Positions 35,767 through 64,000 of a stretch of 64,000 nucleotides of DNA are shown in pieces. Numbering within the stretch: the stretch's first letter is position 1; the number at the start of each line of letters is the position of its first letter. Under the pieces are notes generated by a model, which saw only the letters and a program-made list of their open reading frames with translations, did no database searches and was not told the origin of the DNA. The stretch covers positions 17,823 to 81,822 of the forward strand of contig NIVC01003264.1 in NCBI GenBank assembly GCA_002269645.1, in the 5' to 3' direction. The stretch comes from Macrostomum lignano. Its lineage: Eukaryota. The position numbers and the translations under genes were made by a program.

Positions 35767-36976
35767 ATGAACTTGCTGCTTGGACCAGAAGCGCTTGCGT
35801 TGAAGAGTGAATTGTCTATATTTGATCCACCCCATGTACAGTCAAGTGTTGTTCAGAGTTAATTTATGCATTATCAACCTCAGCACGGCTTGGCACGAGG
35901 GACTCTCAAATTGAATTTGAACTGCCTCTTCCTGGTCATTTTTACATCAACGCTAAACTGAAAGTTTTGACTGTTGCATTCCGTGTTCGAGATTCAGACA
36001 ATACAGCCATTGACGAGGCCAAAAACTACGTGTCCCTGAGTAATCTTCCTTTGGCGGCTCTTTTTCAAGATGTGCAGCTAAGCATTGGCGACACAGCTCG
36101 TCGATGGCGGGAATTTTCTCTATCCTTACAAATTAGCCTATCCTTACAAATGTCTCTAAGCCTGTTGGAATATGATAAAATTGCTCAAAAGGGACCGATG
36201 AAAGCATGGGGATTCCGAAAAGACACTACAGGAGCAATGGCCGGATGTTGTGGGCGACTTTAATGTCGGCTGCATGCAAAGGCGTGCGCTGATAGCAGAC
36301 GATAGACTCTGTGTCATTTCGGGCCCGCTGTTTCTCGACATTTTTGGTCAGCCCGGCTATCTAATCTCAAAGCTTGGCTTGCGCATCAAGCTGATCCCCG
36401 CAGACGCCAAGTTTGTGCTTCTCGCAGCAAGCATTGGCACGAACTTTCTGAAGGCCTACAATATCGGCATTGTTCGTGCAGAGCTTCGTATGCGCTATAT
36501 TCAACCATCGCCCAGTGTCATTGCAGCACACACGGATGAACTGAAACGACAGAACGCTGTGTACCCGATGAAATCACTGCAGATGGGCATATTCACAGTG
36601 CCGCAGGGAACATCAAGCTACACCAGGGAAAATCTGTTTCAAGGATATGTTCCGAAGCTACTCATAGTAGCGTTTGTGCCAAATCGCGCTTTTAACGCGA
36701 GTCTAGATAGCAATCCCTTCAATTTCGTGCATGCACACGTCTCTTTTTTGGTGTGTATGTGAATGGGGAGCCCTGCCCCGAACGGCCTCTTCAACCAAAT
36801 GTTACAGCAAGATGGATGCGCAATGGAGTACACTTGGCTACGGCAGCAACTGGGTCTGTACTTGCGAAACCGAGATATCGGTTTTGACATGGACGATTAC
36901 TTGACTGGATACTGGTCTTTACGCAGAAAATTTGAGTCCAGAACTCGAAGCTGGTGGTGATGCCCAGCCTATGTAG
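35767..36976 (+). pseudogene. Degenerate Maverick/adintovirus double-jelly-roll major capsid protein
   Basis: M...LKSELSIFDPPHVQSSV*; SQIEFELP...Y; SNLPLAALFQDVQLSI; GPLFLDIFGQ..YL...L.LRIKL; AVYPM...FTVPQG...ENLFQGYVPKLLIVAFVPNRAFNA..DSNPFNF; VNGEPCPERPLQP. Stops, frameshifts, C-terminus missing. Confidence 0.88.
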
Positions 36977-37175
36977 GGACATGGACAACAAGAGTAGACT
37001 ACTCTAGCTGTCCATGAGTAGGGAATGTACGACTGGAGATGAAATTCAGTACCCAGACAGCGGCAGTGTATAACGTAATAATTGGAAGCGTCTTTTACAG
37101 GAAACTGCCATTGACAGAATTTCGAGACGTTGTACCAAGTACATTATGGAATGTAAATGTTCCCATCATATCCCG

Positions 37176-38272: not shown

Positions 38273-40502
<2,230 letters not shown>

Positions 40503-46026: not shown

Positions 46027-47050
46027 CTTTGCTGTGTAGAGAAAGTTTCTTTCGAAAACGTCCAATGCAGTTGAATTTAGCTAAGCGTTCGGTACAACAT
46101 ATGAACGCATTCCATTGGCCAGGCAATTCCCTGCCACTGCGCCTCTCTGTGAATGGACCAAAGTCATTGCAAATTTCCTTGTGACATTTTCAACATTACG
46201 GTTCACATCACGGGCGTTTCTGCCTGGTTGCGCGCTGGATAAATAATGATAGTAAGCAGCAACATAAAGCTAAATTGTGCCTGCTGCGGTTGGTAGCTCA
46301 GCGATGGGAACTCGACCGAATATCTCGACCTCGGGGTCATAAATTCATAAATTAGCTGGTTAGAGGAGAGTTCCCAGTGCAGTGACAGCTATTAGAGTGG
46401 CTGATCTACGAAAGTGAGGAGCTAGATACTGCATGAGAATTGCACTTGGTCGTCAAATTGGATATCCGAATTAGAATAATCGAGTTTTAGAGCAAATGTC
46501 ACATTTTAAATTGTGCAATTTCCTGTCCAAATTTGTTATTCCGCTTTTGTTGATAACCGACACTGCTGGTATGAACGCTTGCCAAGTCATGCTTTGACGG
46601 GTCCACAAACTCTGTGAATAGACAACTGCAAACTGCAGCAAATTTGAATGCAACACACACACACACACACACACTTACACGAAAGACTTGGAAAGCCTGT
46701 TTATGGCATGAACCTCTTATGTTTATCCATGCGCTAGCCAGCCTCGCCTCTCGAGCTATAGGACTCCAACAACGAATAAAATCGGGCCGTTGTAAACACA
46801 GGCCATGGCTGCATCTGTAATACGCTATTTCCTCAGGTATGAAGCTCAAGGCACTGTCTAAGCCCATAAAACCTGGCTGCTACACTACCAAATCGGCTTG
46901 TCAAAGTAAGCCGTGGAAATAAAGTAAAATTACAGCAATCACTCCATCCTAGATTGACTTTCGCGATCGATTCAACTTCGCTACCTAATTTGTAATTTCA
47001 TAACATGTTCACCTCATCAAACGAAAAACGAGCGCACCTATGCCCCAATA

Positions 47051-48548: not shown

Positions 48549-51500
48549 TTACACTTGCACAGAAGTTATTGCTGAAGGCGGCTCCTTCCCGCTTCTTTCC
48601 AGTGGAACTGCGTCACTGTCCACCGAATCTCCTCTGTCGTGACGCTCCGTAGTCTCCGAGGTCTCAATCCGCTGCGCAGGATCTGAGTGTACATCTCCGT
48701 CTCTACTATTGTTGGATGTTACTCCGCCTTCCTCCACGAAGACGGTTGACTCGGCTTTCTCGGCGTCCGACTGTGGAATCCTTGCGTCCATTGCGGCCGC
48801 GCAGGTGCAGTGGCTCCACGTGTTGCAGCCGGTTCGGAGACGATCGCTGAAGTAAAATGTTTGATACAAGCAGCGTTCGCAGGCTCCAAATTGAATTGGG
48901 CAAGACGGTAGTCAAGCAACAAGAAGGCAATTAGGAATGTCGTGCACACGTACAGGGTTCACTTTGGCTTTCTCGTCGTCCGGCTTGTACTCACTGTGCT
49001 TTTGGGGTCGGCCCTCTTAGGAGGGGATTGCACAACATACAGTGATGCTTATACTGCAGCTCACTGTGTGTGCCTTTGGGGTTGGCCCTCTTAGGAGGGA
49101 TTGCACAACATACAGTGATGCTTATACTGCAGCTCACACTGTGTGTGCCTTTGGGGTTGGCCTTCTTAGGAGGGATTGCACAACATACAGTGATGCTTAT
49201 ACTGCAGCTCACTGTGTGTGCCTTTGGGGTCGGCCTTCTTAGGAGGGATTGCACAACATACAGTGATGCTTATACTGCAGCTCACTGTGTGTGCCTTTGG
49301 GGTTGGCCTTCTTAGGAGGGATTGCACAACATACAGTAATCTTATACTGCAGCTCACTGTGTGTGCCTTTGGGGTTGGCCTTCTTAGGAGGGATTGCACA
49401 ACATACAGTAATCTTATACTGCAGCTCACTGTGTGTGCCTTTGGGGTTGGCCTTCTTAGGAGGGATTGCACAACATACAGTAATCTTATACTGCAGTCGA
49501 GCTGCAGGTCAATCTAAACCGTACTAAGCCTACCTAAGCCTCGCATGCAGTTTATTTACTTCCCTTTGACTAAAAGCTTACAGAATGAACTCGCCGGTGT
49601 AAAGCAGCGACACTCCAGCGTCCGGAATGCCCAGATTGGACAGGATGCCGATAATTACGATGATGCTGGAGCTCGGCACCGAAGGTAGGGACAAGCCGGA
49701 CACGCCCGCAAGGAATCTGGAAAATTTTAGGACGCTGAAACGACTATGACGATACAGTAGTGCGTAATTTGCAACTCATATATACGAGGATTTATTGCTG
49801 AGGATATGCACCAACTTACTGCAAGTAGGAACGCAAGGATATGAAAAAATTACAGATTGGCTTACTTGACTTACTTACTTTTGGGCCTTACAAGTATATA
49901 GAAATATTTGCAGGAGGGCTCTGGGTACCTTGTCGCAATTCCTTCCGGTTACATTCCGGAGACAATTCTGCATATTTCAACTCACTCCTGGGCACATGCA
50001 AGCGCGCCAACACTGTACGTAGGCACGCACTCATACGCATGCTCACACAGGGTGTGCCGACGCCCTGACTTTCTAATCGTCAGGCATGTACACTCTGTTT
50101 GGGGGGGGGGTACGCCAGTTTTTGTACACAAGCCCCGAATCAAACCAGGGGTTGTGGCGAGTCAGCTACTCCGCTTTACAGGTGAAGGGCTTCGAATCAA
50201 CAAAATTAATTCTTAAGTAACTTTCTTACACAATTAATATGTAGTTTCCAAAGCTAAGTGGCGTGCCAGTCAGCTGAGCCAAGAATGTCACTGAGGCGGC
50301 TATGTAGGCGCACGACCCGTCCGAGTTGGTGTTGCAGCACAGCGGCAGGATGAACCGGGAGATGCGAGGGCGGAGACCCGCGTTGTCGGCGCATTCAAGC
50401 ATCACTGGCAGGGCTGAGACGCTGAATAAAGTGCGAGAGGTGCTAAGCAGGACTGAGGGAGGTGTTGCAGGAGTGAGGGAGGTATTGCAGGAGTGAGGGA
50501 GGTGTTGCAGGAGTGAGGGAGGTGTTGCAGGAGTGAGGGAGGTGTTGCGGGAGTGAGGGAGGTGTTGCAGGAGTGAGGGAGGTATTGCAGGAGTGAGGGA
50601 GGTGTTGCAGGAGTGAGGGAGGTGTTGCAGGAGTGAGGGAGGTGTTGCAGGAGTGAGGGAGGTGTTGCAGGAGTGAGGGAGCTTTTGCTGGATGCAGGTG
50701 TAAAAGAGGTGTTGCAGGTGTAAAAGAGGCGTTGCAGGTGTAAAAGAGGTGTTGCAGGTGTAAAAGAGGTGTTGCAGGTGTAAAAGAGGTGTTGCAGGTG
50801 TAAAAGAGGTGTTGCAGGTGTAAAAGAGGTGTTGCAGGTGTAAAAGAGGTGTTGCAGGAGTGAGGGAGGGGTTGAGCTGGAGTTGGAAGCTTTTAGTTTC
50901 AGGCCAAAGTTTTACGTGGCTTAGAAAGCAAAGCAATGATATATTTTTTTCAAGTACTTCTACAATACTTTTTTTAAGAACAGGTTAACACTAGCAATCC
51001 AGCCCGTTTGGGGAGCGCAAAAATGAAAATGAAAATATGGCTGAAAATAACAAAGAATGGACCCATGCTTCCAGTAAGCCTTGACATCCCAGCAATTCCC
51101 CATGAGCCTTGACATCCCAGCAATTCCCCATAAGCCTTGACATCCCAGCAATTCCCCATAAGCCTTGACATCCCAGCAATTCCCGAATAAGTCTTGACAT
51201 CCCAGCAATTCCCCATAAGCCTTGACATCCCAGCAATTCCCGAATAAGTCTTGACATCCCAGTAATTCCACGTAAGCCTCGACGTCTCAGCAATTCCTCT
51301 AATAAGCCATGAAATCTTAGAAATTTTCCCACCAAGCCTTGGAGTCTGAGCAATTTCCCATAAGCCTTGACATCCCAGCAACTCCTCCCATTAGCCTCGA
51401 CGTCTCAGCAATTCCCCCAGCTGTTAGCCTCATCCCAGCAATTCCCCCAGTAAGCCTTGACATCCCAGCAATTCCCCATAAGCCTTGACAATGACATCTT

Positions 51501-53148
51501 AGCAGTGAAATGTGTAAGCGTTGACATTTCAACAACCCCCATAAGCCTTGAAATCTCAGCAATTTCCCATAAGCCTTGACATCTTGGTATAAAAGAGGTG
51601 TTGCAGGTGTAAAAGAGGTGTTGCAGGTGTAAAAGAGGTGTTGCAGGCGTAAAAGAGGTGTTGCAGGTGTAAAAGAGGTGTTGCAGGTGTAAAAGAGGTG
51701 TTGCAGGAGTGAGGGGGGGTTGAGCTGGAGTTGGAAGCTTGTAGTTTCAGGCCAAAGTTTTATGTGGCTTAGAAAGCAAAGCAATGATATATTTTTTTCA
51801 AGTACTTCTACAATACTCTTTTTAAGAACAGGTTAACATTACTTAATCTACCTGCTATTAGCGCTGAATGCCACCAGGTAGGCCTTCATCATTTTCCAAT
51901 AAAAAGGAAACGGATTACGACGGGCGAAAGCCAGAAACATGGCCAGGTGCACAATGAACTGATTGATAGTTAGAGCTGCCACCACTGTACCAATGAAGGT
52001 GCCGAGACTGATGAAGGTCTGCTCCATGTCCTGAACCTCGGCCAGTGATTTTGCTATGAGGCTCATCAAACCAAGCGGAAGACACCTGTTTGGTAAGGAA
52101 TTGAGGTGCGAATGACCTTGCTGCATTCTTTCCCGAACATTATTACGTATTTCACCTTAGTTTCAGACAGAGGTTGAGCTCATTCGGACTCACCAAATGA
52201 CTTTGCTCAGCAGCAGGATAGTCGCCCTTGTAACCGCGTCGAAAAATTCTCGAAAGGTCTCCGCACTTCGACTACCCATAGCCGATGTGGCCAGTCCGAA
52301 AAGTACACTCACAAAGAGCGCTCCAAGGATGTTCATGCCGCGGCTGGTGCCGTTCTGTCGAACAAAAACTGTGCTACCGTTTTGCAACTGCGGAGTGTAG
52401 ACTGTTTGGCTCTGAAGTGGACAACATTTCAGAAAATATAATTAGCAGCCTAAGATATCAGCATGCCTGTGATTTTTGGCATCAAATGACTACCCTCACT
52501 CTCCCTTTGATCTGCTTTGCTTCCAGTTGACCCTGGGCATCTCAGCAATCCCGCATGACCCACACCAATTCAGCGACCCCCCCTCGTGAGCTTTGTGATC
52601 TCAGCCATTCTCCCCAAGAGTCAGCATTTCAGTGATCTCCCATGAGCCTTGACAACTTAGCAATTCCCCAATAATTAGTCTTCTATGTTCGGCAGGCGAT
52701 TCTTTTATGGTTTAACCCTAACTCCAGGCTCAAAATTCCAGCAATCGTCCCACAAGTCTTGACGTCTCAGCCATTTCCCATGAGCTTAACATGTGCCAAG
52801 CCCATACCCAAAATAATGACGCCACACAGGAAATCGAGTTCAGATCCTCTTGGTATCAGAGACGGTTCGATACCGCTCTGGCAAAGCCCCTCGGATTTAG
52901 TTTTTCAGTTTAGCCTTTCGCCTGTTATCCAGTAAACACGATTTTTGCACTCAATATAATTTCCAAGTTAAGTTTATACCGTCTCGAAAGCCATGGTGAT
53001 GATGTTGTCCGGTATCAGGTTTCTAAAATGCAGTATAGGAGAAACATAGTGCTCTGTTTATTGTAAAAAACTATCGAGTAAAGAGTGCCTTAATTTCAGA
53101 CGGCTCAACCTGAAAAGATCCGTCAGGATGTCAGATGTGGTGAGTCTG
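48549..53148 (-). CDS. SLC1/EAAT-family amino-acid transporter, 3' part. Exons 53148-53110 (truncated), 53022-52980, 52411-52194, 52085-51852, 50421-50230, 49716-49582, 48846-48549
   Basis: All six GT-AG introns join in phase: DILTDLFR|NLIPDNIITMAFET|...GMNILG...W|CLPLG...ANSS|VSALP...NSDGS...|...SVPSSS...GEFIL|DRLRTGCN. The 5' exon is interrupted by the Maverick terminus, so this copy may be disrupted. Confidence 0.9.
48985..49497. repeat. 72-73-bp intronic minisatellite
   Basis: About 7 copies of ACTGCAGCTCACTGTGTGTGCCTTTGGGG...CATACAGT..T.CTTAT. Confidence 0.93.
50455..51840. repeat. Intronic repeat complex: two related 20-bp arrays (GGTGTTGCAGGAGTGAGGGA, GGTGTTGCAGGTGTAAAAGA), a 28-bp array (AGCCTTGACATCCCAGCAATTCCCCATA) and an approximately 250-bp local duplication
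   Basis: Direct reading; 50700-50990 is similar to 51590-51840. Confidence 0.9.
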
Positions 53149-53707
53149 AGTAGTATACGTTTTTTTGACACAAAGCCGATTTCCTTATGGCGAAATACAT
53201 AGTAAGTACAGGCCCAAAAAAATGGCAGAGTCCGAAATTTCATGTGCACGCAGTCTGAAATTCCATGTGCACGCAGTCTGAAATTCCAAGTGCACGCTAA
53301 ATATCTTTTACGCAACGTGATTATTCAGACGAATTGCATATCCACCTGTCCAAAATACAAGTAACCGATTCTAGCAATGGTGACACAAACACACTTCAAA
53401 GGATTCCATTCAAGACAAATTTACTCCAAAGCTATTCACACATTTCAAGTGTTATTGAAATATTGAAAACTTGTGAATATTATCACCCTTTTGAAGAAAG
53501 ATAGTAAATGATCTATTCTTGAGTGCCTATAGAATTTTTGCACCAACTTGAGCAGATGGTTTACAGATACTATGTCAACAACTGCGTCAACATGCTTCTT
53601 CTTTATACTATATATATATACGAACACACTGACACAGAAAATATTAAATAACTTAAACCAAGTTTACATTATACTACTTGTTCAACTATACTTACATCTT
53701 AAGTGAA

Positions 53708-54569
53708 ATGAAGCGATCACGTCAGCAGGAATTGGCCGAGCGCTATGTTAAACAAGGTAAGATAATCACCTACTCTAGTTCAGTTTTCTTTTTTAGATTG
53801 ACTGTTCGCTATAGTTTAGTTTCTAGATTGATTGTTAGTTCGGTTTCTGTTTAGACCGATCCTCTGTTTGTTCAGTCTCTAGATTGATTTTCTGCTAGTT
53901 CGGTTTCTGTTTAGACTAATACTCTGCTAGTTCAGAATTTCTAGATTGATTGTCTGCTAGTTCGGTTTCTGTTTAGACTGATTCTCTGCTAGTTCAGTTT
54001 CTATATACATTGTATACATGCACCTATACCAAATTTCCCTCATCTTATCCATTATTATAGCATTCAAGAATGGTTTCTTCACGCGGCCACCTCCAGATCA
54101 GTGCAAACGCATTTGCCACGACACCACCACATCCAATTCTGCTGCAAGAGCATCATATTCTACATCTCTCGCCAGAGTAACCTCGATTCATGTCGAGAGA
54201 CAGACAACTGAGCTAGATCGCATTTACACAAGAACTGATGTTATTCAGTCAATTAGGCAGCAATCGAACCCACGACCAACTGACCAACTGCAGTATGCAC
54301 CACCACCACCATCACCAACCAGCTACAATGACCCAACAAAGCAAACTTGCAGTAAGCCTACAAGTACCAAACCAACGACAGCAACTGAAACACCATCATC
54401 ATCAATTGCTATTTCTACCCAAGTTCAACCGCTGCTAAACTCGCCAATTATTGTACAGAAGGACATCAAGTCTGTAAAAGTCTCTCAAATGAGCACAGGC
54501 TTCTACCAAGTAGAATTAGCAAAGACCTGTAATACAACTCAAGTATTTGAATATTGGGACCTATCTTAA
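53708..54569 (+). CDS. Maverick ORF of unknown function; exons 53708-53756 and 54061-54569, 185 aa
   Basis: MKRSRQQELAERYVKQ-G|GTAAGA donor and TTATAG acceptor join in phase 1 (GCA) to the long ORF. The intron contains an approximately 61-bp tandem repeat. Confidence 0.6.
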
Positions 54570-54819
54570 AAAGACATTTTTTCTAACTCTTCATAAAATT
54601 TTGCCAGCAATGTGTCCAAGTAATTGCTCTTTTAGTATATATCAAACAAGTCTGTAATCAATAATATAATCTCTATAAATTCATTATTCTAAAAAATTCT
54701 TTCAATTTTATTCGCCATTCATTGAAATTATTTAATTCAATATAAAGTCAATATCTTGTACAGTCATCATTAAACAAAAATTATTAATCCATGCAAATAA
54801 TTTTTTTTTCATACGTTTC

Positions 54820-55520
54820 TTTAGCCATGGTCTGGCTTTTGCCTCAACAGTATGATTTAGCTGTGGTCCAGCTTTTGCCTCAACAGTATGATTTAGCTGT
54901 GGTCCAGCTTTTGCCTCAACAGTTTTTAGCCGTGGTCCGGCTTTTTTGCCTCAGCAGTATGATTTAGCTGTGGTCTAGCTTAAAACTGCATCAACAGTGA
55001 TTTAGCTATAGTCCAGGCTTAACTACCTCAACGATGATTTAGCTATAGTCAAGGCTTAACTGTCTCAACAGTAATTTTAGCTGTTGTCCAGACTTAACTG
55101 CCTCAACAGTGATTTTAGCTGTGGTCCAGGCAACTGTCTCAACAGGGATTTAGCTGTAGTCCGATTAGCTTAACTGTCCAGTTATTTAGCTGTGAGCCAA
55201 GCAGCAGCACCCGTCTCAACAGTGAGAATTAGCTATGGTCAGCTTTACCTCAACTGTGATTTGGCTGCTGTGGTCTAGCATAACTGACTCAACAGTAATT
55301 TTAGCTGTAGTCGTCCAGCTTAACCACCCGTCCAGTTTTATAACCATGGTCCAGCTTAACCACCGTCTCAACGTACAGCGATTTAGTCGTGGTCCAGCTT
55401 AACCGTCTCAACGTACAGTGATTTAGCCATGGGTCTAGTAGCAATTAACCGTATCAATAGTGATTTAGCCGTGGTCCAGCTTAACTGTCTCAACACAGTA
55501 ATTTAGCTTAGTCCAAACAG
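54820..55520. repeat. About 36-bp degenerate tandem array inside the Maverick (GCCTCAACAGTATGATTTAGCTGTGGTCCAGCTTTT)
   Basis: First copies near-identical at 36-bp spacing, diverging progressively 3'-ward. Confidence 0.88.
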
Positions 55521-56165
55521 CATTTGTGTGTCAACTGCACTGACTGCATGCGGTTATAGCAGCGGCAGTCATTATAGTCCCAACAAGCTGCGCGTCGCAG
55601 CATGATAGTGTAACTCTATATAGCTTCTGCTCAATATAGGACTGCAAAAGCTGAGTTACAACTATACCTTTTTCTGTTTGAAAAGTAACACTCTATATAT
55701 AGGTTACTCAAGCAATCTCTTGTCACCGTGCGAGCTAAAAAATTCCAACATGCAAGCAAAACTTTCAATAAATTAATTTCATAGCACCGCGTGCAGCTTA
55801 TTTTTACTCTAAAATCCAAGATTGCTAATTTTTCAAGTCGCAAAATATTTTAATTACATTCTACTTGAGAACAAAACCAATCTAATGAAGCAGCAACCAG
55901 CAGTCTTCTTATTAAACGCTTGCCATCGTGTTACTCTTGCAAATTTATAACTAGTGTGCCTAAGATTCATAAATTTTATTGTATAAAATATGAACCTACA
56001 TTTGCGTAAAATTAGACCTAATCATGCAACCCACCCTAGAAACTTATGCCACCTTTGGCACGCAACAATGTCTTAATCAGCACGCAACAATTAAATTTGT
56101 TTACTAGTTCACAAACAGCATGCAATGCTTGCTATAAATACAAGACCCGAAATGGTCAATTTTTC

Positions 56166-57417
56166 ATGAGCTCAATCATTACAGCAAAAGAAATACTATA
56201 TTCAATTGCTTGTAAGACATGGCAGCTTGCATCAAGACGGAGTCAATTGTACGCTCCGACTCGAGTCCGATTTTTTACGTTGGAGAGCAGTCTACAACCA
56301 CGACTGGTTCGTCCTGCCAGTTTCGATCTATTACGTGGAAACCATCAATCGAGTGTACAAAATGGTACCCAATTATATTGCAAACCAAGGCTCCAATGGA
56401 GCTTTTTCGTGGAATCGCAGAAAGGCCAGAGCTCGATCATCCGTCTTGCAGACACGACTCTCGCGACGCAGTAAGTGTCCAATTTCATCCAGACAGCTGC
56501 GATAAGGAACTCTTCCACTCTCTCCGGTGAGCACCATATTAAATTTATACAATTAATTTTAGGAAACTATATTAATAATTTATATAATGTTTTGCAGTCA
56601 AGTCGAAAAAGGTCTATCGGTCAAGTTGAACGAGATTCAAGATGCTCGACCCTTGGCACGACTAACAAAACCAGCTCATCAGCATGCTAACGACGTCCTC
56701 GAGTTTGTGCCTCAACAATGGCTGGCTATAAAGCCTGCTTACCCTTGTGCCACAATCAGGATCAGCAACGATCATCCACACGGGAAGGAGGTGTCCATTT
56801 CCGATTTCAAAGGTGTCAGCGGTACCTACCAAATGACAGTGCAAGCAACGAGCTTGTATTGTCCAAAAGGCTGCCTCGTCTGGCGCATTACATTCGCTGT
56901 GCGCTCTCTGACACTCATAGAATCTTCCGACAACATGTTGCAGCGCCTCGACATGTTCAAGGGAGTGCTTGCACACCTACCCGCGACCAAGTCAGCAATT
57001 AGAAGCAGGAGTCCGTCCCCAACATCTACCTGTGAGCAAGAAGAAGCAAATGAACAAAGCCTGCAGAATTCAAGCCAGGTGACACCTGCCAAGTCACCTG
57101 CAAAGCGTCGGTCTACCACCACCGTATCGAAGAAGTCGACTACATCGAATGCAGCGCCAGCCTCTATTGAACCGCCGCCTAAAAAGCAAGTTCGAAAACG
57201 CAGCGGTGCAAAACAGCAAAACAATTCTGCCGAAGCTGGTGCAGATGGCACAGACTGGGTGGAGGCTCCACCAGCAAAGATCTTGGTGAGTACACCTGCC
57301 TCTGGAACCAGGGTAGCGTCCAAGGAGACAGCATTTTTAAAGCGTGCTGCTGCGGACGCTACTACAGCTAGCGTGTCTTCATCGGACGACTCGTACAGCA
57401 GCTCTGATGATGAGTAA
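56166..57417 (+). CDS. Maverick ORF, exons 56166-56470 and 56598-57417, about 374 aa; possible OB-fold ssDNA-binding protein
   Basis: A 127-nt GTAAGT...TTTTGCAG intron joins two track ORFs in phase 2 (CA|T). Beta-rich core ending WRITFAVRSLTLIE, S/T/K-rich tail, acidic terminus SSSDDSYSSSDDE. Function is inference; an alternative ATG exists at 56046. Confidence 0.65.
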
Positions 57418-57626
57418 CAAAATTTTGACTAATTTTATCCAAGTTTTAACTAACTTATTCCACTATATTTATCAAATTTTTGGCTAGGGAAATATTATTT
57501 TTTAGGGAAAAGCTCAAAACATTTTTTGCTACTCCTTGTACGCTAACCAGGTTTTGTAATTTAATATTAGAATTTACGATAGTATAGTCATGTTTAACTT
57601 TTCTTATTATTTATTTTCCGTTTTAG

Positions 57627-58184
57627 CGACTTGTCCTATTAATAGTTACTGCGAGTCTGAAGCTGCACCCGTTTGAAAAATTTGATTTAAAGCAGACCAA
57701 ACAGAAGCTACAGACCAGAAACCGGTTTTGCAAACTATTCCTAAGCCGACCAACAATGCTAAAGACAATTTATTCAAATGCTAAAATCCAACTTTATCCA
57801 GCAGGAAAACTAACTATATATGGCTGTAAATCAAATTCTCAGATAGTCTCAGTTTTACGATTTATCAACGACACTATTAATTGTGTAGATTTTGATTCAG
57901 TAAAAATTCAGAGCAGTACCTATGTCGGCTTTATTGGTCATCTTTGGCCAAAATTCGGTTTCTCTAGTCTAAAAAGATATGCAGGCTACTATTCGAATTA
58001 TCTGGTTGGATACGATGCAGAAAATTTCCCACAAGCAGTTTCTGTTAGATCAGCATCAAAACCAAGGCTTTTTTGTAACATATTTTTTTCGAAAAAGTTT
58101 GTTATTATGGGCGTTCAAAACACTCATGAATTGAATAATATTCTTAACCATGTCAAGGATTTTTTAATCTCTGTTAATAACTAA
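57627..58184 (+). CDS. TATA-binding-protein (TBP)-fold protein, 185 aa from the splice acceptor, with no ATG before the first TBP repeat
   Basis: IVTASL...KFDLK ~ IVSTVNL..KLDLK; LYPAGKLTIYGCKS ~ IFSSGKMVCTGAKS; VKIQ ~ FKIQ; YDAENFP ~ YEPELFP; KPRLFCNIFFSKKFVIMG ~ KPRIVLLIFVSGKVVLTG. Confidence 0.82.
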   Translation, partial: RLVLLIVTASLKLHPFEKFDLKQTKQKLQTRNRFCKLFLSRPTMLKTIYSNAKIQLYPAGKLTIYGCKSNSQIVSVLRFINDTINCVDFDSVKIQSSTYVGFIGHLWPKFGFSSLKRYAGYYSNYLVGYDAENFPQAVSVRSASKPRLFCNIFFSKKFVIMGVQNTHELNNILNHVKDFLISVNN

Positions 58185-58407
58185 ACTTAACAAGTAAACA
58201 ATTGCTGTCAAATCGCAGTTGCGATGCATTCTTTTACAAACATTTTGTCTTTTTTTATTTATTTACCAATTGTTTTCTCTAATAGTAAACGTGTCAGCTA
58301 TACCTATAACTAACCAAATCATCATTTTTCTTACAGCCGCAAATGACAAACCGGATCATCTATTAATATTATGCTCGATACGCTCGTTGTCGAGCTAGGT
58401 GCACACA

Positions 58408-59145
58408 ATGCCGCGTGCACAATGCCAAATCTGCAGAAAAAAGTTCAGTAATCAAGCCGAGCTGCATGCTCACTCGCATGGTGCTTGTTTTTCACCGCAA
58501 CGATTACTGACCGGATCGCTGCAAAACCTGATCGAAAACCCACCAGATGGGTGGTCCATCGCTTTGCGCGAGTCAGCTCATCGTGGTCGGGTAAATTTTG
58601 TCGAATTTACTCCCACTCTTGAACAACAAGGCAACAGCTCTGGCGAGTTACTTCCTGGCGAGTTGATTGCGTCTTTAAGAGAACCAATATTTAAAATATT
58701 GGAAAAAATTGGCTCACCCAGTTTATTAATAAGAGTCTGCTTTCACTTGAAAGTGACACTATTTCGACCGAAAACAGCAGCAGACGACAACGATGGCTCG
58801 AGCAGCGAAGAGATCATTTCGGTCTATTTTAATACCAACATTGCGACAATATCATTTGATGAGACGATTGCAAACAGTGACATGCTGTTATCTCCCGAGG
58901 CCTACAATGACTGGTTCGCACGCGTTATTAATCAGTTGTTAATAAAAATTGACAATTTTCAATCTCGAGGTAGTAATTGGCAATATAGAGCAATCGAGCA
59001 GCTAGACTTGATGCTCTGCGTTTATCGCAAAAGCCATGCAAGCACACTGTCAACAAATACGTCCCACGGTGGTGTGGGGGCGGGCGGCGGCAGTGGTGGT
59101 GGTGGCGGCGGTGGTGGTGGTGGTGGTGGCGGCGGTGGTGGTGGT

Positions 59146-59177
<32 letters not shown>

Positions 59178-59508
59178 GCGCGGGGAGTCCGGTCCAGTCC
59201 GGTCCGGTCCAGTCCGGTCCGGTCTGGTTAAGCAGCAATCGTTTAAAGTTCCAGTCTCAATCGGTCGCAAAGCTGGAGCAGTACTGCTTCTAAAGCCGCA
59301 CAGAGCAGTTTAAAGCATCAAGACTATTTAAGAGTCTTACACAAGCGACAACTTGTGTTTTCGCGCATGCAGTCCATTCGTTCTCGAAAACAGAAAGTTT
59401 TTTTTGATGCAACAAAGAAAACTTGCACTAAGCTTCTTCGATACGAAGCGATCCTGGACAAGTTCAATTAATTCGCTACCCTTTGGACACTGGCACTTGG
59501 CTAATTAA
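58408..59508 (+). pseudogene. Protein-primed family-B DNA polymerase, internally deleted (N-terminal ZnF/terminal-protein region plus extreme C-terminus)
   Basis: C2H2-like CQICRKKF.....LHAH; ESAHRGR; YFNT; KIDNFQSRGSNW; poly-Gly; then from about 59292 in other frames LKHQDYLRVL...MQSIRSRKQKVF/LMQQRKLALSFFDTKR......SLPFGHW*. No Exo or Pol A/B/C motifs. Confidence 0.8.
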
Positions 59509-59800
59509 TTAACAATATGCTCTGATCTCTTTTGTTGTACAAAGTAATAGCATGCTATAGAAGACTGTAACCCATCATTAATTTTTTCATTGATCATTAT
59601 TTACAATAAATAAATGATACCGGCATTCGTTTAAATTATAATTTTAGCACTTTTTTGTGTTTAATTATTTGAAAAAGTATATTTTTTATAGTTAGATTCT
59701 CAAGACTAAGCTTGTGTTTGTAGTAGACGTAAATGTAGTGCTATCGTTCATGTTTCAAGAAAAAAAACTTTTTTTTAAACTTTCAGCTACAAGAATCGAC

Positions 59801-60283
59801 ATGAATCCCGAGCAGCAGCAGCAACAACAACTAACTGATCGTAAGCTTTTAGTTGAACGTCTATACGATTCGGCAACGATTCCGACCCGAAAAACTGTCG
59901 GGTCGATCGGGTATGATCTTTGCGCTGGCGTCGATGGTACCATTCCGGCCTACGAGTCCCGGAGTGTGCGAACCGGACTCAAAATTCGCTTACCGCCTGG
60001 TACCTATGGCAGGATAGCGGGACGTTCCAGCATGGCTCTGCACAGCTTATTTGTTGGCGGTGGCGTAATCGACCCCGACTATACTGGTGAAATCTGTATA
60101 GTCTTGTTTAATTACAGTCCGGAAGACTTTGAGTACTATGCCGGGCTCAGTATTGCACAACTGGTTCTGGAGCAGGCCGTGCTTGCTTCAGTCTATGTGA
60201 CTGAAGCAGACAATTCGATTCGGATGATTGAGCCGCCGACCAAGCGGCGCGGCTTTGGCGGCTTTGGCAGCACTGGCCAATAA
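59801..60283 (+). CDS. dut: Trimeric dUTPase
   Basis: All five motifs: GYDL, GRSS, GVIDPDYTGEI, IAQLV, RGFGGFGSTG. Confidence 0.96.
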   Translation: MNPEQQQQQQLTDRKLLVERLYDSATIPTRKTVGSIGYDLCAGVDGTIPAYESRSVRTGLKIRLPPGTYGRIAGRSSMALHSLFVGGGVIDPDYTGEICIVLFNYSPEDFEYYAGLSIAQLVLEQAVLASVYVTEADNSIRMIEPPTKRRGFGGFGSTGQ

Positions 60284-60398
60284 GTATAATAATAATAATA
60301 AACTGATTTTTTTCTTTGGTGATTGGTGCACTATGCGAGAGCTTTGTAAATACTATAAGCAATTTTAAAAATTTATGCCTAAAATATATGTTGTAAAA

Positions 60399-60818
60399 AT
60401 GTCTCCAGCGAAAGATCGAGGTTTTAAAAAGAAAAAGAAGAGCATTCGTAAAAAGAAGAAATCTATTAGAAAGATTAATAAAAAGCAACAAGGTTATGGT
60501 GTCGTAAATTGGTTAATTAATCATTTACCATTTGAAGCACATTTACCCGGCGGATATCAGTTTTGTGGTCCAGGTACGCAACTGCAAGCTAGGCTAGCAA
60601 AAGGACAACGAGGAATTAATCGGCTTGACAATTTGTGCATGCTTCACGACGTGGCCTATGATAAAAATTCTGACGTGCAAGAGAGGTTAAAAGCTGATAA
60701 GCTATTAGAATCTGGTGCACGAGAGATTGCCCACGATCCGTCTACTGGTTGGAAAGAAAAACTAGCTGCGAAGTTGGTTACCAAGGTTATGCAAGTTAAG
60801 CAACGCTTTGGTGCTTGA
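60399..60818 (+). CDS. Parvovirus-VP1u-like phospholipase A2 virion protein with basic N-terminus
   Basis: Ca-loop YQFCGPGT, catalytic HDVAY, ADKLL; K/R-rich N-terminus. Alternative ATG at 60375. Confidence 0.9.
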   Translation: MSPAKDRGFKKKKKSIRKKKKSIRKINKKQQGYGVVNWLINHLPFEAHLPGGYQFCGPGTQLQARLAKGQRGINRLDNLCMLHDVAYDKNSDVQERLKADKLLESGAREIAHDPSTGWKEKLAAKLVTKVMQVKQRFGA

Positions 60819-60820
60819 AA

Positions 60821-61510
60821 ATGCAGCAGCCATACAATATGCAACTAGCTCACGATTCTACATTTATTATTGCTGGACCTTCAAACTCGGGTAAAACTGA
60901 ATGGACGTTGCGTTTGTTGACTGAACGAAAAGAATTATTTGATAAAAAACCGTGCCGTCTTGTTTGGTGCCATGGATCAAGTTTGAAACCAGACGATCAA
61001 CAACGAATTAGAACATGCTGGCAAAAAAGCGGTCTTGACCCTATTGTTTTTGTACCCGAATTCACACCACAGATGATTAATCGTTTTTTACCACACGATT
61101 TGGTTGTTGTTGACGACTTGCAAAGCGAGATTGCTAAGTTGCCAGAATTTACTAGTATGTTTACAAAGCATGCGCATCATATCCCTTTGACTTGTCTGTA
61201 CCTTTGTCAAGGTCTTTTTAACAAGTCTGATCCAGAAGCACGCATGCGAAGTTTATCAGCTAGTTATATTTGTCTAACTCGTAGTGTGCGCGATCGAACC
61301 ACAGTTGAACATCTCGGTCGACAAATGTATCCGCGTAATAGTAGGTTTCTAGTGAATGTGTATGAAGACGCAACAAATAACAAACCTTTTTCATATTTAT
61401 TCATTGACCTGCGGCAAGTGACACCAGATTTTTTACGATTGAGAACAGGAATATTTTCTGGTGATGAACAAGTTGTCTATACTCGTGAATGTGATGCAAA
61501 GTTTGTGTAA
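60821..61510 (+). CDS. A32-like (FtsK-HerA) genome-packaging ATPase
   Basis: Walker A GPSNSGKT, Walker B VVVDD, FTKHAHH...YLCQGLF, PFSYLFIDL....PD.LRLRTGIF. Confidence 0.95.
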   Translation: MQQPYNMQLAHDSTFIIAGPSNSGKTEWTLRLLTERKELFDKKPCRLVWCHGSSLKPDDQQRIRTCWQKSGLDPIVFVPEFTPQMINRFLPHDLVVVDDLQSEIAKLPEFTSMFTKHAHHIPLTCLYLCQGLFNKSDPEARMRSLSASYICLTRSVRDRTTVEHLGRQMYPRNSRFLVNVYEDATNNKPFSYLFIDLRQVTPDFLRLRTGIFSGDEQVVYTRECDAKFV

Positions 61511-61567
61511 TATTATTATAAGCAAATTATAAACTGTTGTCAATATTAGTTTGTGTTTTATTTCAAA

Positions 61568-62557
61568 ATGAGTTTTTACGTTTTTTTGCCGTCAAACGAT
61601 ATCAGTTACGAAACCAACTCGCCTAATGAATTTCGAGTGCGACTAACTGAACCAATAAATTTATTGAACGGATTCTTCGAGGTTGCACTAGTTGAATTAC
61701 TGTGCCATGGAGCAATTACGACGCCAAATGCTCATCGTGAGCGTCGATTTGAAGTTCCATATTTTGCGGACATTGACTCAATAATACGATTAAAGAAAAA
61801 CTATTGGGGTCGTGTTTGGGCAGAGGCAGACTTGGATGCTTACGTTTCCTGGCAACCGTCTGGTACAGATGAAAAATTTGCCTGGCTTTTACGAAATTCA
61901 GGCGAAAAAACTATTGGATTAGAACTACCAGTTACATTTATGGACGCTTTCAAATTTGACTCTTGGAAGAAACTTTCTGGACTTGTCTCGGAAAAATTAT
62001 CAAAACCTGCCGCTGGTAGTGTACAACCACCGGATGGTTCATACTTGGATTTGATAAAAAGTCTCGACAATACTCTAGCGCTAGTACCTGAGAACTATTA
62101 TGTTTTTTATTGTGTTCTATCGCCTGGTGAAGCTATACGACTTGTTTCGCATGGAGACTATCTTCGAAAAACGGAAGGAGAAGTGTACATCAAAGTACAC
62201 CAATATTGGTTGAGAAATCGTGTTTGGCGCATTAACAAAACCTACTTGGATGCTGTGCTACCTTCTCCGATGCCTAGTAAAACGGTTTACATGTACTGTT
62301 ACACAGATATAATCGAGTATCAAGCAGTGGGAAGTACATCAGTACCGTTGCTTCGAGTTGTGGAACTCCAACAAAAGAAAAACGGAGAACTTATACGCGA
62401 TAGCAGTGCATTGCAAACACCCTACTACTTGAAAACAAATCGACAACAAATTCACGAGATTTCGATTCGACTATCGGACCAGCGCGGAAAACCGTTTAAT
62501 TTTGATCCGGGAGCACACGTTGTTGTCGTACTGCATTTTAAACATAGGTCGGACTAA
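61568..62557 (+). CDS. Minor capsid protein (penton, single jelly roll)
   Basis: FYVFLPSN...N.PNEF.VRL..PI.L...FEVALVE N-terminus; YCYTDIIEYQAVG...VPLLRVV...Y......I.I.L.DQ.G.PF.F...VVVVLHFK C-terminus. Confidence 0.9.
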   Translation: MSFYVFLPSNDISYETNSPNEFRVRLTEPINLLNGFFEVALVELLCHGAITTPNAHRERRFEVPYFADIDSIIRLKKNYWGRVWAEADLDAYVSWQPSGTDEKFAWLLRNSGEKTIGLELPVTFMDAFKFDSWKKLSGLVSEKLSKPAAGSVQPPDGSYLDLIKSLDNTLALVPENYYVFYCVLSPGEAIRLVSHGDYLRKTEGEVYIKVHQYWLRNRVWRINKTYLDAVLPSPMPSKTVYMYCYTDIIEYQAVGSTSVPLLRVVELQQKKNGELIRDSSALQTPYYLKTNRQQIHEISIRLSDQRGKPFNFDPGAHVVVVLHFKHRSD

Positions 62558-62613
62558 TTTATAAGCAAAGATTAATTGTGTAATAGAAAATTTTGTGAAT
62601 TTGTTTTGTAAGA

Positions 62614-63018
62614 ATGAGCGAACTAACAGAAAAAGGAAAACAAAATGCTCGCTCATTGTGTCAGTGTGCTTTTTTACTACAAATTGTTTATCGGCTAAAG
62701 CATCCAAAGCAGAGAAAAAGTTTTTTACAAACACTTTCAGAGTCGGAGATACGATGTCTAGTAGACTTTCTGTTTAATATTATTAGTGGACGTATTAAAA
62801 TTAGTAACTGTAACAAAAGACGACTTGAGAAGCATCGCAGATATATACGCCAGCTTTTGGAACAGAAGACTCCAATTACTGCAAAAAGGAAAATACTTGT
62901 CCAACACGGAGGATTTTTACCTTTTTTGGCTCCAATTATTGCCGCTCTACCTGCTATAAGCACTGCGCTTGGGATAACGTCTGGAGTAGTTGGTACCGCG
63001 CGGGAGCAGCGAATTTAA
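62614..63018 (+). CDS. Small basic Maverick virion protein with an adenovirus pX-like hydrophobic C-terminus
   Basis: KQRK.FL.......I.CL.....NI..G.I......K..L.KH...IR.L...K.....KRKILVQHGGFLPFLAPIIAALPAI. Confidence 0.8.
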   Translation: MSELTEKGKQNARSLCQCAFLLQIVYRLKHPKQRKSFLQTLSESEIRCLVDFLFNIISGRIKISNCNKRRLEKHRRYIRQLLEQKTPITAKRKILVQHGGFLPFLAPIIAALPAISTALGITSGVVGTAREQRI

Positions 63019-63051
63019 TACGATCAATTCAACGAAAGTAGTAGGAATATA

Positions 63052-63717
63052 ATGCGAACTAACGAGAGTAGTAGTTTTCAACGAATGTATCTAGTACCTG
63101 AATCTGTGTATCAATCTGCATGTCAAGGTGCAGAGCAAGGATCGTCACCAACTGCTGAGACACCTCGAAAAACTGAAGTTTTAGACGCACCGCAAGATGC
63201 TCTGGCAAAAAATATGGTGGAAATGAGAGACCAAATGGATAACTTGGACAAGGAAATGGAAAAGGAGCCAAATTACACAGCTCAATTGAAACGAAGCAGA
63301 TTGGAAGACAAACTTTTAAAATTGCGCAAAGTCTATCGCACTGGAGACGAGGACAATCTGTCACTTGTTCGCAAAGGGACTACTGTAAGAAGTTCATATG
63401 CCAGCGAATCAAGGGAAATTCCTAAAGTTTTTTTACCACGTTTCGAAGCTCTCGCTCAAAACCTATTTTCGGACATGGACAAGAATGCAGAACCAATGCT
63501 GGCTAATTTGACTGATGCCGAGATACAAGATCTCATGGAATATGTTGTTCGAGACAGACCGCTTAAGCGACACGAGACTCAACCGCCTAGTGGACTAAAA
63601 ACATTTTTAGACTTTCTTCGAAAACGTGGAATCGCAGCAAACCAAATCGGGCGTCATGTACGAAACGAGCTAATGTCTGCTCCAAAACTGTTGCAAAGGA
63701 GGATCTTATCTGTTTGA
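63052..63717 (+). CDS. Conserved Maverick/adintovirus hypothetical protein
   Basis: RMYLVPE N-terminal motif, LDKEM, and I.DL...V.R.R.....P.G...FL..L....I....IG C-terminal motif recurrent in Maverick ORFs. Confidence 0.7.
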   Translation: MRTNESSSFQRMYLVPESVYQSACQGAEQGSSPTAETPRKTEVLDAPQDALAKNMVEMRDQMDNLDKEMEKEPNYTAQLKRSRLEDKLLKLRKVYRTGDEDNLSLVRKGTTVRSSYASESREIPKVFLPRFEALAQNLFSDMDKNAEPMLANLTDAEIQDLMEYVVRDRPLKRHETQPPSGLKTFLDFLRKRGIAANQIGRHVRNELMSAPKLLQRRILSV

Positions 63718-64000
63718 AAATTATCAAACACTGAATTAAGTTGTTTTAAAATTACAGATTACGTTTTAACAAAATTGATTCGAGCACTATAAGCTTTTTA
63801 AAAAGGTTAATTTTTTGTTTATGAAAAATATATAGTTTAATAAGACAAACCATGTCATCTATCTTCCAAAAACTTTTGATTCGTCTCTGTGAGTTTTTTG
63901 CATAAAATCTGAATGTGTGCCGTTTCTGGGAAAGGACAGCAACGAGGATACTGACGGAGATTCGATCGAGGCTTCGTTCTTTTGTTGCAACTGTCAAACG

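What the first reader, a model, noticed from the sequence alone, without database searches (positions are those of the whole stretch)
53110..53160. The Maverick terminus splits a host SLC1 exon; a 6-bp TSD is predictable
Seen: on the minus strand the transporter exon ...RLTTSDILTDLFR ends (5' side) exactly at AGTAGT (53149-53154), with only A-rich sequence and no pyrimidine tract in front of it. TM1-3 exons are absent from the window. Established: Mavericks begin with AGT-type repeats and make 6-bp TSDs. Inference: integration into coding sequence, with the far end beyond 64000 reading ...ACTACT followed by AGTCTG and then the rest of the exon and gene. This would be an insertional knockout of one allele or paralog.
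Basis: partly seen in the sequence, partly recalled or inferred. Interest (0 to 1): 0.7.

Follow-up and report, generated by a model that had tools for sequence, protein, structure and literature searches.

The report
Maverick element splits a transporter exon

Summary
The finding is confirmed. The window is the last 64 kb of Macrostomum lignano contig NIVC01003264.1, and that contig ends at 64000, inside the element.

- **5' half of the gene.** The missing SLC1 half (TM1-3) lies on contig NIVC01000641.1. There its exon runs ...GTTAG CAGACT straight into AGTAGTATACG..., the inverted copy of the window's terminus.
- **Repeats.** The terminal inverted repeat is 84 nt perfect and 100/104 overall. 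The 6-bp target-site duplication is CAGACT, which reads AGTCTG at window 53143-53148.
- **Empty site.** A third contig (NIVC01003783.1) carries an intact 520-aa gene that reads ...GTTAG CAGACT CACCAC..., with one CAGACT and a continuous reading frame.
- **The CAG.** The CAG at 53148-53146 is therefore coding sequence, not a splice acceptor.
- **Copy number.** The insertion is present in two of three paralogous copies of the locus. It looks like a single recent event: the two element copies differ at 5 of 7,875 bases.
- **The element.** It has Maverick ends ((AGT)2...(ACT)2), an rve-plus-chromodomain integrase, a packaging ATPase, PLA2, an adenovirus-pX-like protein and a dUTPase. Only the last ~40 codons of its DNA polymerase B gene remain, so it is a polymerase-deleted derivative.

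This is a new member of a known kind, of modest interest.

The parts
53143..53148 (.). One copy of the 6-bp target-site duplication. It reads AGTCTG on the + strand and CAGACT in gene orientation.
   Evidence: The same CAGACT precedes the other element end on L003 (11305-11310). It occurs once at the empty site, L008 5708-5713. BLAST of L008 to L003 ends at 5713 and to the window copy starts at 5708.
53149..53252 (+). Terminal inverted repeat of the element, beginning AGTAGT.
   Evidence: Identical to L003 11311-11394 for 84 nt, and 100/104 overall. The end motif (AGT)2 is the one reported for vertebrate Mavericks (PMC8097293).
53229..53297 (+). Subterminal tandem repeat, 23 bp x 3.
   Evidence: The other end has a single unit.
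53149..64000 (+). The part of the Maverick-type element held in the window: 10,852 bp of about 14,750 bp. The contig ends inside it.
   Evidence: Window 57773-64000 equals L003 21434-15212 in reverse orientation, at 99.7% identity. Within that overlap, 3,128 nt were checked base by base and showed 0 mismatches. A further 3,901 bp is present only on L003.
53110..53148 (-). The 3' piece of the split SLC1 exon, 39 nt including the TSD. It encodes (S)RLTTSDILTDLF(R).
   Evidence: It is contiguous with ...GAACCTCCCGTTAG in the empty-site copy.
53149..53243 (-). TIR sequence that GenBank model BOX15_Mlig025348g1 (P0025) uses as its start codon and first 32 codons. This is a chimeric model.
   Evidence: P0025 begins MKFRTLPFFWACTYYVFRHKEIGFVSKKRILL, then RLTTSD.... 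The ATG is at 53243-53241.
52980..53022 (-). SLC1 exon (NLIPDNIITMAFET).
   Evidence: AG/GT borders.
52194..52411 (-). SLC1 exon.
   Evidence: PF00375 profile positions 133-179.
51852..52085 (-). SLC1 exon.
   Evidence: PF00375 profile positions 180-254.
50230..50421 (-). SLC1 exon.
   Evidence: PF00375 profile positions 255-320.
49582..49716 (-). SLC1 exon.
48549..48846 (-). Last SLC1 exon, including the stop codon.
   Evidence: The spliced translation matches P0040 residues 136-520 at 384/385 positions.
59386..59505 (+). Remnant of the protein-primed DNA polymerase B gene. Only the last ~40 codons are recognisable (one large truncation).
   Evidence: 65% identity, E 2e-12, to the C-terminus of the PF03175 PolB of relative L013. 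No PolB signal elsewhere in the element.
59714..60283 (+). dUTPase ORF.
   Evidence: PF00692, E 1.8e-29.
60375..60818 (+). ORF with a parvovirus-type phospholipase A2 domain.
   Evidence: PF08398, E 3.4e-9. Typical of Alpha adintovirus virion modules (PMC8502044).
60815..61510 (+). Packaging ATPase (A32/FtsK type).
   Evidence: The Walker A motif GPSNSGKT is read directly. Relatives at E 1e-31 to 1e-36 carry PF04665/PF02456.
61553..62557 (+). 334-aa ORF, candidate vertex (penton) protein.
   Evidence: Position and synteny with L009 and L010 only. No family or structure match.
62614..63018 (+). ORF resembling adenovirus core protein X.
   Evidence: PF05829, E 7e-7.
63052..63717 (+). Conserved ORF of unknown function.
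   Evidence: Homolog in L009.
57756..58184 (+). ORF with a TATA-binding-protein-like domain (cargo).
   Evidence: PF00352, E 2.3e-7.
58399..59313 (+). ORF with one weak C2H2 zinc-finger match and a long poly-Gly tract (cargo).
53812..55507 (+). Non-coding tandem arrays inside the element (about 62-bp and 36-40-bp units).

Best explanation
A Maverick/Polinton-type (adintovirus-like) element of about 14.75 kb integrated into the third coding exon of an SLC1-family amino-acid transporter gene of Macrostomum lignano.

**Shown**
- The element's two ends are inverted repeats beginning AGTAGT. They are flanked by a direct 6-bp duplication, CAGACT, of sequence that occurs once in an uninterrupted paralogous copy.
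- The insertion falls within the codons AGC-AGA-CTC (Ser-Arg-Leu), between TM3 and the conserved T-x-D-x-L-x-D-L-x-R motif.
- The 5' gene fragment (TM1-3) and the 3' fragment (the rest of the transporter) ended up on two contigs, because the assembly broke inside the element.

**Inferred**
- The element's own rve-type integrase joined the 3' ends of a linear double-stranded element to target phosphates staggered by 6 bp. Gap repair then produced the duplication.
- The interrupted copies cannot make a transporter. The upstream fragment reads 40 codons into the repeat and stops. The downstream fragment has no native start.
- The cost to the animal is buffered by the intact third copy.
- The element was probably already polymerase-less when it integrated. 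If so, it depended on a polymerase supplied from elsewhere.
For: - **Three-way junction comparison.**
  - L008 (empty site): ...CCTCCCGTTAG CAGACT CACCACATCTGAC...
  - L003: ...CCTCCCGTTAG CAGACT|agtagtatacg...
  - Window, gene orientation: ...cgtatactact|CAGACT CACCACATCTGAC...
  - The L008 alignments to the two sides overlap by exactly 6 bp (5708-5713).
- **TIR.** 84 nt perfect, 100/104 overall.
- **One insertion on two contigs.** The two contigs overlap across window 57773-64000 (99.7% identity); the 3,128 nt checked base by base had 0 mismatches.
- **Intact paralog.** P0040 (520 aa) reads ...GGEPPVSRLTTSDILTDLFRNLIPDN....
- **Window exons.** They encode P0040 residues 136-520 at 384/385 identity, and nothing in the window matches residues 1-135.
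- **Outgroup.** On scaffold L004, TM1-3 through ...TTQDTILDLIR form one uninterrupted ORF, with a phase-2 intron immediately after the R, as in the window.
- **Element genes.**
  - Integrase with rve and Chromo domains.
  - ATPase relatives carry PF04665.
  - PLA2, pX-like protein and dUTPase.
  - 10-gene synteny with L009.
  - The protease ortholog matches ASFV S273R.
- **Family traits in the literature.** End motif and 6-bp TSD match published Maverick traits (PMC8097293).
- **Second filled copy (L002).** It has an identical junction, and its element differs at 5 of 7,875 bases.
Against: - No read-level or cDNA data were available. The contiguity of the two half-loci rests on a mismatch-free overlap in an assembly known to be redundant and fragmented (PMC10733133).
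- Loss of function was not measured.
- A WormBase/UniProt model (P0026) joins ...GGEPP directly to SQTVY..., an in-frame skip of 29 residues. Some aberrantly spliced product therefore cannot be excluded.
- Capsid identity of the 446-aa and 334-aa proteins was not demonstrated.
- PolB is absent, so strict Maverick membership is incomplete.
Confidence: 0.95

Rival explanations
1. The element lies in an intron, and CAG 53148-53146 is the ordinary 3' splice site of a short exon. The gene would then be intact apart from a long intron.
For: - A CAG directly precedes the reading frame, and the downstream introns all have GT...AG borders.
- All neighbouring junctions could be read as phase 2.
Against: - In the empty-site copy the CAG lies in the middle of continuous coding sequence, GTT AGC AGA CTC ACC, with no intron there.
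- The upstream contig carries the same CAGACT fused to the other TIR.
- Splicing from ...CCC|GT to CAG|ACT would be out of frame and would hit a stop (read directly).
- The outgroup L004 has no intron at this point.
Confidence: 0.01
2. The junction is an assembly artefact: a chimeric contig joins a repeat to a gene, and no real insertion exists in the animal.
For: - Mlig_3_7 is fragmented and redundant (PMC5730564; PMC10733133).
- All three contigs that carry the element end inside it.
- Two contigs covering the same DNA differ by indels.
Against: - Two independent contigs (the window and L002) share the identical 3' junction.
- A third contig has the complementary 5' junction.
- The two junctions together reproduce a perfect 6-bp TSD around perfect TIR ends. 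That is an integrase signature which misassembly does not create.
Confidence: 0.02
3. The two filled contigs record two independent insertions into the same site of two paralogs, that is, a target-site hotspot.
For: The host flanks of the two filled copies differ by about 1% a few kb downstream, while the elements are nearly identical.
Against: - The junction and TSD are identical.
- The first ~1.5 kb of flank is identical between the two filled copies, while both differ from the empty copy at 18 of 1,467 sites.
- Farther out the three copies form a mosaic.
- This pattern fits one event carried on a shared haplotype block, later exchanged between copies by recombination or gene conversion, or represented redundantly in the assembly.
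Confidence: 0.02

Closest known systems
Vertebrate Mavericks (Barreat & Katzourakis 2021, PMC8097293; end motifs after Kapitonov & Jurka 2006)
   Same: - 5'-(AGT)2 ... (ACT)2-3' ends, a perfect 6-bp TSD and TIRs.
- The published ranges are 46-1,447 bp for TIRs (104 bp here) and 12.7-24.6 kb for length (~14.75 kb here).
- An rve integrase, a packaging ATPase, a protease and capsid-module genes are present.
   Different: - The host is a flatworm.
- The polymerase B gene is reduced to a ~40-codon remnant.
- The element carries a dUTPase, PLA2, a pX-like protein, a TBP-like ORF and a C2H2/poly-Gly ORF.
- Capsid folds were not verified here.
Alpha-type adintoviruses (Starrett et al. 2021, PMC8502044)
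   Same: - Virion module with a parvovirus-type PLA2 domain and an adenovirus pX-like domain.
- rve integrase, FtsK/A32-type ATPase and an adenain-like protease.
- Animal host.
   Different: - PLA2 and pX are in two separate ORFs here, rather than one fused PLA2X gene.
- No PolB and no OTU-PolB domain.
- Found integrated with a TSD, not as a free genome.
Unnamed environmental or related-host elements L009 (JGI metagenome 3300040801) and L013 (Logan SRR22198361)
   Same: - L009 has ten genes in the same order: dUTPase, PLA2, ATPase, p302, pX, p241, integrase, p119, p442, protease. Protein identity is 27-58%.
- The L013 ATPase is 67% identical.
   Different: - L013 has a PF03175 PolB of at least 763 aa immediately upstream of its dUTPase, where the M. 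lignano copy has cargo ORFs and repeats.
- The termini of these relatives are not available.

Membership tests
Maverick / Polinton (adintovirus-type) element | Terminal inverted repeats | tested here: met
   84 nt perfect and 100/104 overall, between window 53149-53252 and L003 11311-11414.
Maverick / Polinton (adintovirus-type) element | 6-bp target-site duplication | tested here: met
   CAGACT flanks both ends and occurs once at the empty site L008 5708-5713.
Maverick / Polinton (adintovirus-type) element | Conserved end motif 5'-(AGT)2 ... (ACT)2-3' | tested here: met
   Both ends read AGTAGT from outside inwards. The motif is described in PMC8097293.
Maverick / Polinton (adintovirus-type) element | Retrovirus-like (rve) integrase | tested here: met
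   L003:14032-15192(-), 386 aa, has PF00665 at 4.5e-8 and a Chromo domain at 1e-6. The gene starts about 20 bp beyond the window end.
Maverick / Polinton (adintovirus-type) element | Protein-primed DNA polymerase B (PF03175) | tested here: not met
   - A six-frame Pfam scan of 53149-57800 found nothing.
- tblastn with two relatives' PolB found only a ~40-codon C-terminal remnant at 59386-59505.
- The closest relative, L013, has the gene.
Maverick / Polinton (adintovirus-type) element | FtsK/A32-type packaging ATPase | tested here: met
   The window 60815-61510 protein has homologs at E 1e-31 to 1e-36 that carry PF04665/PF02456, and its Walker A motif is read directly. The protein itself gave no Pfam match above threshold.
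Maverick / Polinton (adintovirus-type) element | Adenain/Ulp1-like cysteine protease | tested here: inconclusive
   - The 210-aa ortholog in L009 matches ASFV S273R protease at E 1.3e-4 and PF02902 weakly, at 0.009.
- The M. lignano copy aligns over only the middle part and is split over two frames on contig L003.
- That assembly is known to contain indel errors.
Maverick / Polinton (adintovirus-type) element | Double-jelly-roll major capsid protein and penton protein | tested here: inconclusive
   - The candidates (446 aa on L003; 334 aa at window 61553-62557) are conserved and syntenic.
- They gave no PDB sequence or profile match.
- The single-sequence AlphaFold model had pLDDT 35.
SLC1 / sodium:dicarboxylate symporter family (host gene) | Match to PF00375 across the transporter core | tested here: met
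   - The exons match profile positions 133-320.
- P0025, P0026, P0037 and P0040 are annotated with PF00375.
- The binding-site motifs are divergent (for example CCNTNSDG where canonical SLC1 has a GATxNMDG-type motif; this comparison is from my own knowledge). Transport function itself is untested.
Exonic transposon insertion (gene disruption) | The empty site is continuous coding sequence, and the filled site separates it | tested here: met
   The outgroup ORF is continuous at this point.

The most novel reading that the evidence does not exclude
The element may have been polymerase-less at the moment it integrated. On this reading the family includes satellite-like Mavericks that kept the integrase and the virion module but swapped PolB for cargo (a TBP-like ORF, a zinc-finger/poly-Gly ORF, tandem arrays). 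Such elements would have been propagated very recently in M. lignano with the help of a polymerase-bearing relative.

Arguments in favour:
- The near-identity of the two copies (5 differences in 7,875 bases).
- The open cargo ORFs.
- The intact ends.

A deletion after insertion is not excluded.
Probability: 0.45. Interest if true: 0.55.

Novelty: new member of a known kind. Interest (0 to 1): 0.35.

Why it matters
- **A textbook-quality integration event.** Both junctions, the TSD and the empty site are found within one genome assembly. This shows that Maverick-type elements were active very recently in M. lignano, a flatworm used as a model for regeneration and transgenesis. The library searched holds no paper describing such elements in this species.
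- **An annotation problem explained.** Two GenBank gene models (BOX15_Mlig025348g1/g2 and BOX15_Mlig019478g1) are halves of one interrupted gene, each extended into the element's terminal repeat.
- **A marker for the paralogous copies.** The presence/absence pattern among the three copies of this neopolyploid genome is a ready-made marker for how those copies exchange sequence.
- **A question about non-autonomous Mavericks.** The polymerase-deleted structure raises the question of how non-autonomous Mavericks spread.

None of this changes what is known about how Mavericks work.

Tried and rejected
- **Extending the contig.** An exact look-up of the window's 221-aa ORF found nothing on record. 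The window turned out to end at the contig end.
- **Other element copies in the window.** blastn of 53100-54100 against the window found only internal tandem repeats.
- **ATPase search.** It returned no M. lignano protein. The GenBank annotation excluded transcripts overlapping repeats (PMC5730564).
- **Six-frame Pfam scan by DNA reference.** It was repeated with X marking the stops and gave no family.
- **PHROGs.** The element proteins gave nothing useful.
- **PDB searches for the capsid candidates.** Single-sequence and 3-sequence profile searches gave only chance-level hits, or none.
- **AlphaFold.** The single-sequence model of the 334-aa ORF had pLDDT 35, so no fold search was run on it.
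- **Literature.** Searches for Macrostomum with Maverick or Polinton gave nothing relevant.
- **Unused search.** I considered using the one representative-library search to look for other gene models ending in TIR-encoded peptides, as a proxy for other insertions. I dropped it because 50% clustering would hide such chimeras.
- **Rejected readings.** An intronic insertion, an assembly chimera and two independent insertions are all rejected; see the rival explanations.
Full report
**1. Where the window comes from**

A search with the joined SLC1 exons returned two near-identical Macrostomum lignano proteins. The exact look-up of one of them, P0025 (BOX15_Mlig025348g1), gave contig NIVC01003264.1 of assembly GCA_002269645.1. 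The reverse complement of the window matches that locus base for base. The distance from the model's start codon to the contig end equals the distance from 53243 to 64000. The window is therefore the last 64 kb of that contig, and the contig stops at 64000.

**2. The observation**

- AGTAGT is at 53149-53154.
- On the minus strand the frame (S)RLTTSDILTDLF(R) runs from 53148 to a GT donor at 53109-53108.
- Six further exons follow, at 53022-52980, 52411-52194, 52085-51852, 50421-50230, 49716-49582 and 48846-48549.
- All have AG/GT borders. Their spliced translation equals residues 136-520 of the intact paralog at 384 of 385 positions.
- Three of them match Pfam PF00375 profile positions 133-320.
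- Nothing in the window matches residues 1-135, which include TM1-3.

The hexamer by itself is worthless as evidence. It occurs 32 times in the window on both strands, about as often as expected from base composition.

**3. The other half of the gene and the other end of the element**

The N-terminal 133 residues of P0026 found P0037 (BOX15_Mlig019478g1, 176 aa) on contig NIVC01000641.1, fetched as L003.

- Its third exon reads ...GAA CCT CCC GTT AGC AGA CT and continues directly into AGTAGTATACGTTTTTTTGACAC....
- From the terminus inwards this sequence is identical to window 53149 onward for 84 nt, and matches at 100 of 104 positions.
- The six host bases before it, CAGACT, are the reverse complement of window 53143-53148 (AGTCTG).
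- The last 40 residues of P0037 are a translation of the terminal repeat.
- The first 32 residues of P0025 are a translation of the same repeat read outwards, from an ATG at 53243.

The two GenBank models are therefore the two halves of one interrupted gene.

**4. The empty site**

The 90% cluster of P0025 has a second member, P0040 (BOX15_Mlig003570g1, 520 aa). It reads ...GGGEPPVSRLTTSDILTDLFRNLIPDNIITMAFETSQTVY... without interruption.

- Its gene spans 5.8 kb on contig NIVC01003783.1 (L008), and the TIR is absent from that locus.
- At the site the DNA reads ...CCTCCCGTTAG CAGACT CACCACATCTGAC..., with one CAGACT.
- BLAST of L008 to L003 stops at 5713, and BLAST to the window copy starts at 5708. 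The 6-bp overlap is the duplication.
- The CAG at 53148-53146, which could have been a splice acceptor, is thus part of the codons AGC-AGA-CTC inside an exon.
- An outgroup supports the same exon structure. On a metagenomic eukaryote scaffold (L004), one uninterrupted ORF encodes TM1-3 through ...KVTTQDTILDLIR. A phase-2 intron then follows at the same place as the donor at 53109.

**5. One insertion, two contigs, three gene copies**

- Window 57773-64000 matches L003 21434-15212 in reverse orientation.
- Over 3,128 nt compared base by base there are no mismatches, only nine gap positions. The two contigs describe the same insertion, and the assembler broke inside it.
- Adding the 3,901 bp present only on L003 gives an element of about 14.75 kb.
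- A second filled copy, L002 (NIVC01001135.1), has the identical junction, and its element differs at 5 of 7,875 aligned bases.
- In the first ~1.5 kb downstream of the site the two filled copies are identical, while each differs from the empty copy at 18 of 1,467 sites. Farther away the three copies form a mosaic.
- This fits what is published for this assembly: about 70% of it lies in three-copy paralogous blocks of a neopolyploid genome (PMC10733133; PMC5704211).

The simplest reading is a single, recent insertion on a haplotype block that is now present in two of the three copies. The spread could be by recombination, by gene conversion, or by redundant representation in the assembly. I cannot tell which.

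**6. What the element is**

Genes within the window:
- dUTPase, 59714-60283 (PF00692, E 1.8e-29).
- Parvovirus-type PLA2 domain protein, 60375-60818 (PF08398, E 3.4e-9).
- ATPase with a Walker A motif, 60815-61510.
- A 334-aa ORF, 61553-62557.
- An adenovirus protein-X-like ORF, 62614-63018 (PF05829, E 7e-7).
- A 221-aa ORF, 63052-63717.

Relatives of the ATPase carry the poxvirus A32 and adenovirus IVa2 families.

Genes on L003:
- A 386-aa integrase with rve and chromo domains.
- A basic 163-aa protein.
- A 446-aa protein.
- A protease-like region.

Relatives:
- All ten genes of metagenomic contig L009 have counterparts in the same order.
- L009's last gene matches the ASFV S273R cysteine protease at E 1.3e-4.
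- More distant relatives (L010-L012) show the classical layout of PolB (PF03175), integrase and ATPase.

Published family traits:
- The (AGT)2/(ACT)2 ends, the 6-bp duplication, and the TIR and total lengths fall within published Maverick traits (PMC8097293).
- PLA2 together with pX is the mark of the Alpha adintovirus virion module (PMC8502044).

**7. What is missing or broken**

- **DNA polymerase B.** No polymerase B gene is present. A six-frame Pfam scan of 53149-57800 is empty, and tblastn with the PolB of L010 finds nothing. The closest available relative, L013 (ATPase 67% identical), has a PF03175 PolB of at least 763 aa immediately upstream of its dUTPase. Only the last ~40 codons of that gene are recognisable in the window, at 59386-59505. 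That is one large truncation.
- **What sits in its place.** A TBP-like ORF, a zinc-finger/poly-Gly ORF, a 276-aa ORF and about 1.7 kb of tandem arrays.
- **Protease.** The protease-like gene is split over two reading frames on L003 (at least one frameshift).
- **Two ORFs ending early.** Two ORFs end earlier in the window than in the overlapping contig.
- **Caveat.** The two contigs describe the same DNA and differ only by indels. These small frame differences may therefore be sequencing noise and should not be read as decay.
- **Capsids.** Capsid identity of the 446-aa and 334-aa proteins rests on conservation and position only. PDB searches gave nothing, and a single-sequence model had pLDDT 35.

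**8. Mechanism and consequences**

Shown: the ends, the duplication and the position in the coding sequence.

Inferred from what is established for rve integrases and Mavericks: the 3' ends of a linear element were joined to target bonds staggered by 6 bp, and repair created the duplication.

Consequences for the gene, inferred from structure:
- The upstream fragment would give TM1-3 plus 40 repeat-encoded residues.
- The downstream fragment lacks its own promoter and start codon.
- Clean removal of the element by splicing is not possible in frame using CAG 53146-53148.
- An in-frame skip of 29 residues, as drawn in UniProt model A0A1I8J571 (P0026), would delete the conserved D-L-x-R-N-L-I-P segment.

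The GenBank models are derived from transcript assemblies (PMC5730564). Chimeric exon-repeat transcripts are therefore plausible, but multi-mapping among three near-identical copies prevents a firm conclusion. The intact third copy presumably covers the function.

**9. Verdict**

The corrections are:
- The contig ends at 64000.
- Two of three copies are hit.
- The element is a polymerase-deleted derivative.

This is a new member of a known kind. It is useful for annotation and as a marker in this genome, but it is not surprising to a specialist.

Noticed in passing
window 35761-37149 (+): A second, unrelated relic. It is a single-frame match (40% identity, E 5e-96) to the element's 446-aa capsid-like protein, interrupted by 10 stop codons. 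No other element genes lie nearby, so it looks like a solitary decayed fragment of a different Maverick-type family.
   Followed up: partly
window 59386-59505 (+), and L013 3-2294: Only the last ~40 codons of a polymerase B gene survive upstream of the dUTPase. The closest relative has the full-size PF03175 gene at that position.
   Followed up: yes
window 57756-58184 (+): An ORF inside the element has a TATA-binding-protein-like domain (PF00352, E 2.3e-7, two stretches). This is an unusual cargo for a Maverick.
   Followed up: no
window 58399-59313 (+): ORF with one weak C2H2 finger match and a ~40-residue poly-Gly tract encoded by a GGT/GGC array at 59067-59165.
   Followed up: no
window 53149-53243 (-) and L003 11311-11434: GenBank models BOX15_Mlig025348g1/g2 and BOX15_Mlig019478g1 are chimeric. 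One takes its start codon and 32 codons from the terminal repeat. The other takes its last 40 codons and its stop from the same repeat.
   Followed up: yes
window 57773-64000 versus L003 15212-21434: Two contigs covering the same DNA differ by indels: 0 mismatches and 9 gap positions in the 3,128 nt compared base by base, and 99.7% identity over the whole overlap. Frameshifts seen in this PacBio-based assembly are therefore not reliable evidence of gene decay.
   Followed up: partly
window 48995-49496, 50447-50874, 51075-51707; L003 10160-10730: The SLC1 introns are filled with tandem arrays (73-bp, 20-bp and 28-bp units; a 20-bp unit repeated about 28 times in intron 1 on L003). These create long spurious ORFs on both strands.
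   Followed up: no
window 44686-46065 (-): A single-exon 459-aa GDA1/CD39 nucleoside phosphatase gene lies just downstream of the SLC1 gene (PF01150, E 8.8e-68).
   Followed up: no
window 40015-40407 (-): Fragment of a piggyBac-type transposase (PF13843, E 3e-10).
   Followed up: no
L001, L002 and L008, the first ~10 kb downstream of the insertion site: The three paralogous copies are a mosaic. Blocks where the window copy equals L002, equals L008, or where L002 equals L008 alternate over a few kb. This suggests recombination or gene conversion among the copies.
   Followed up: partly
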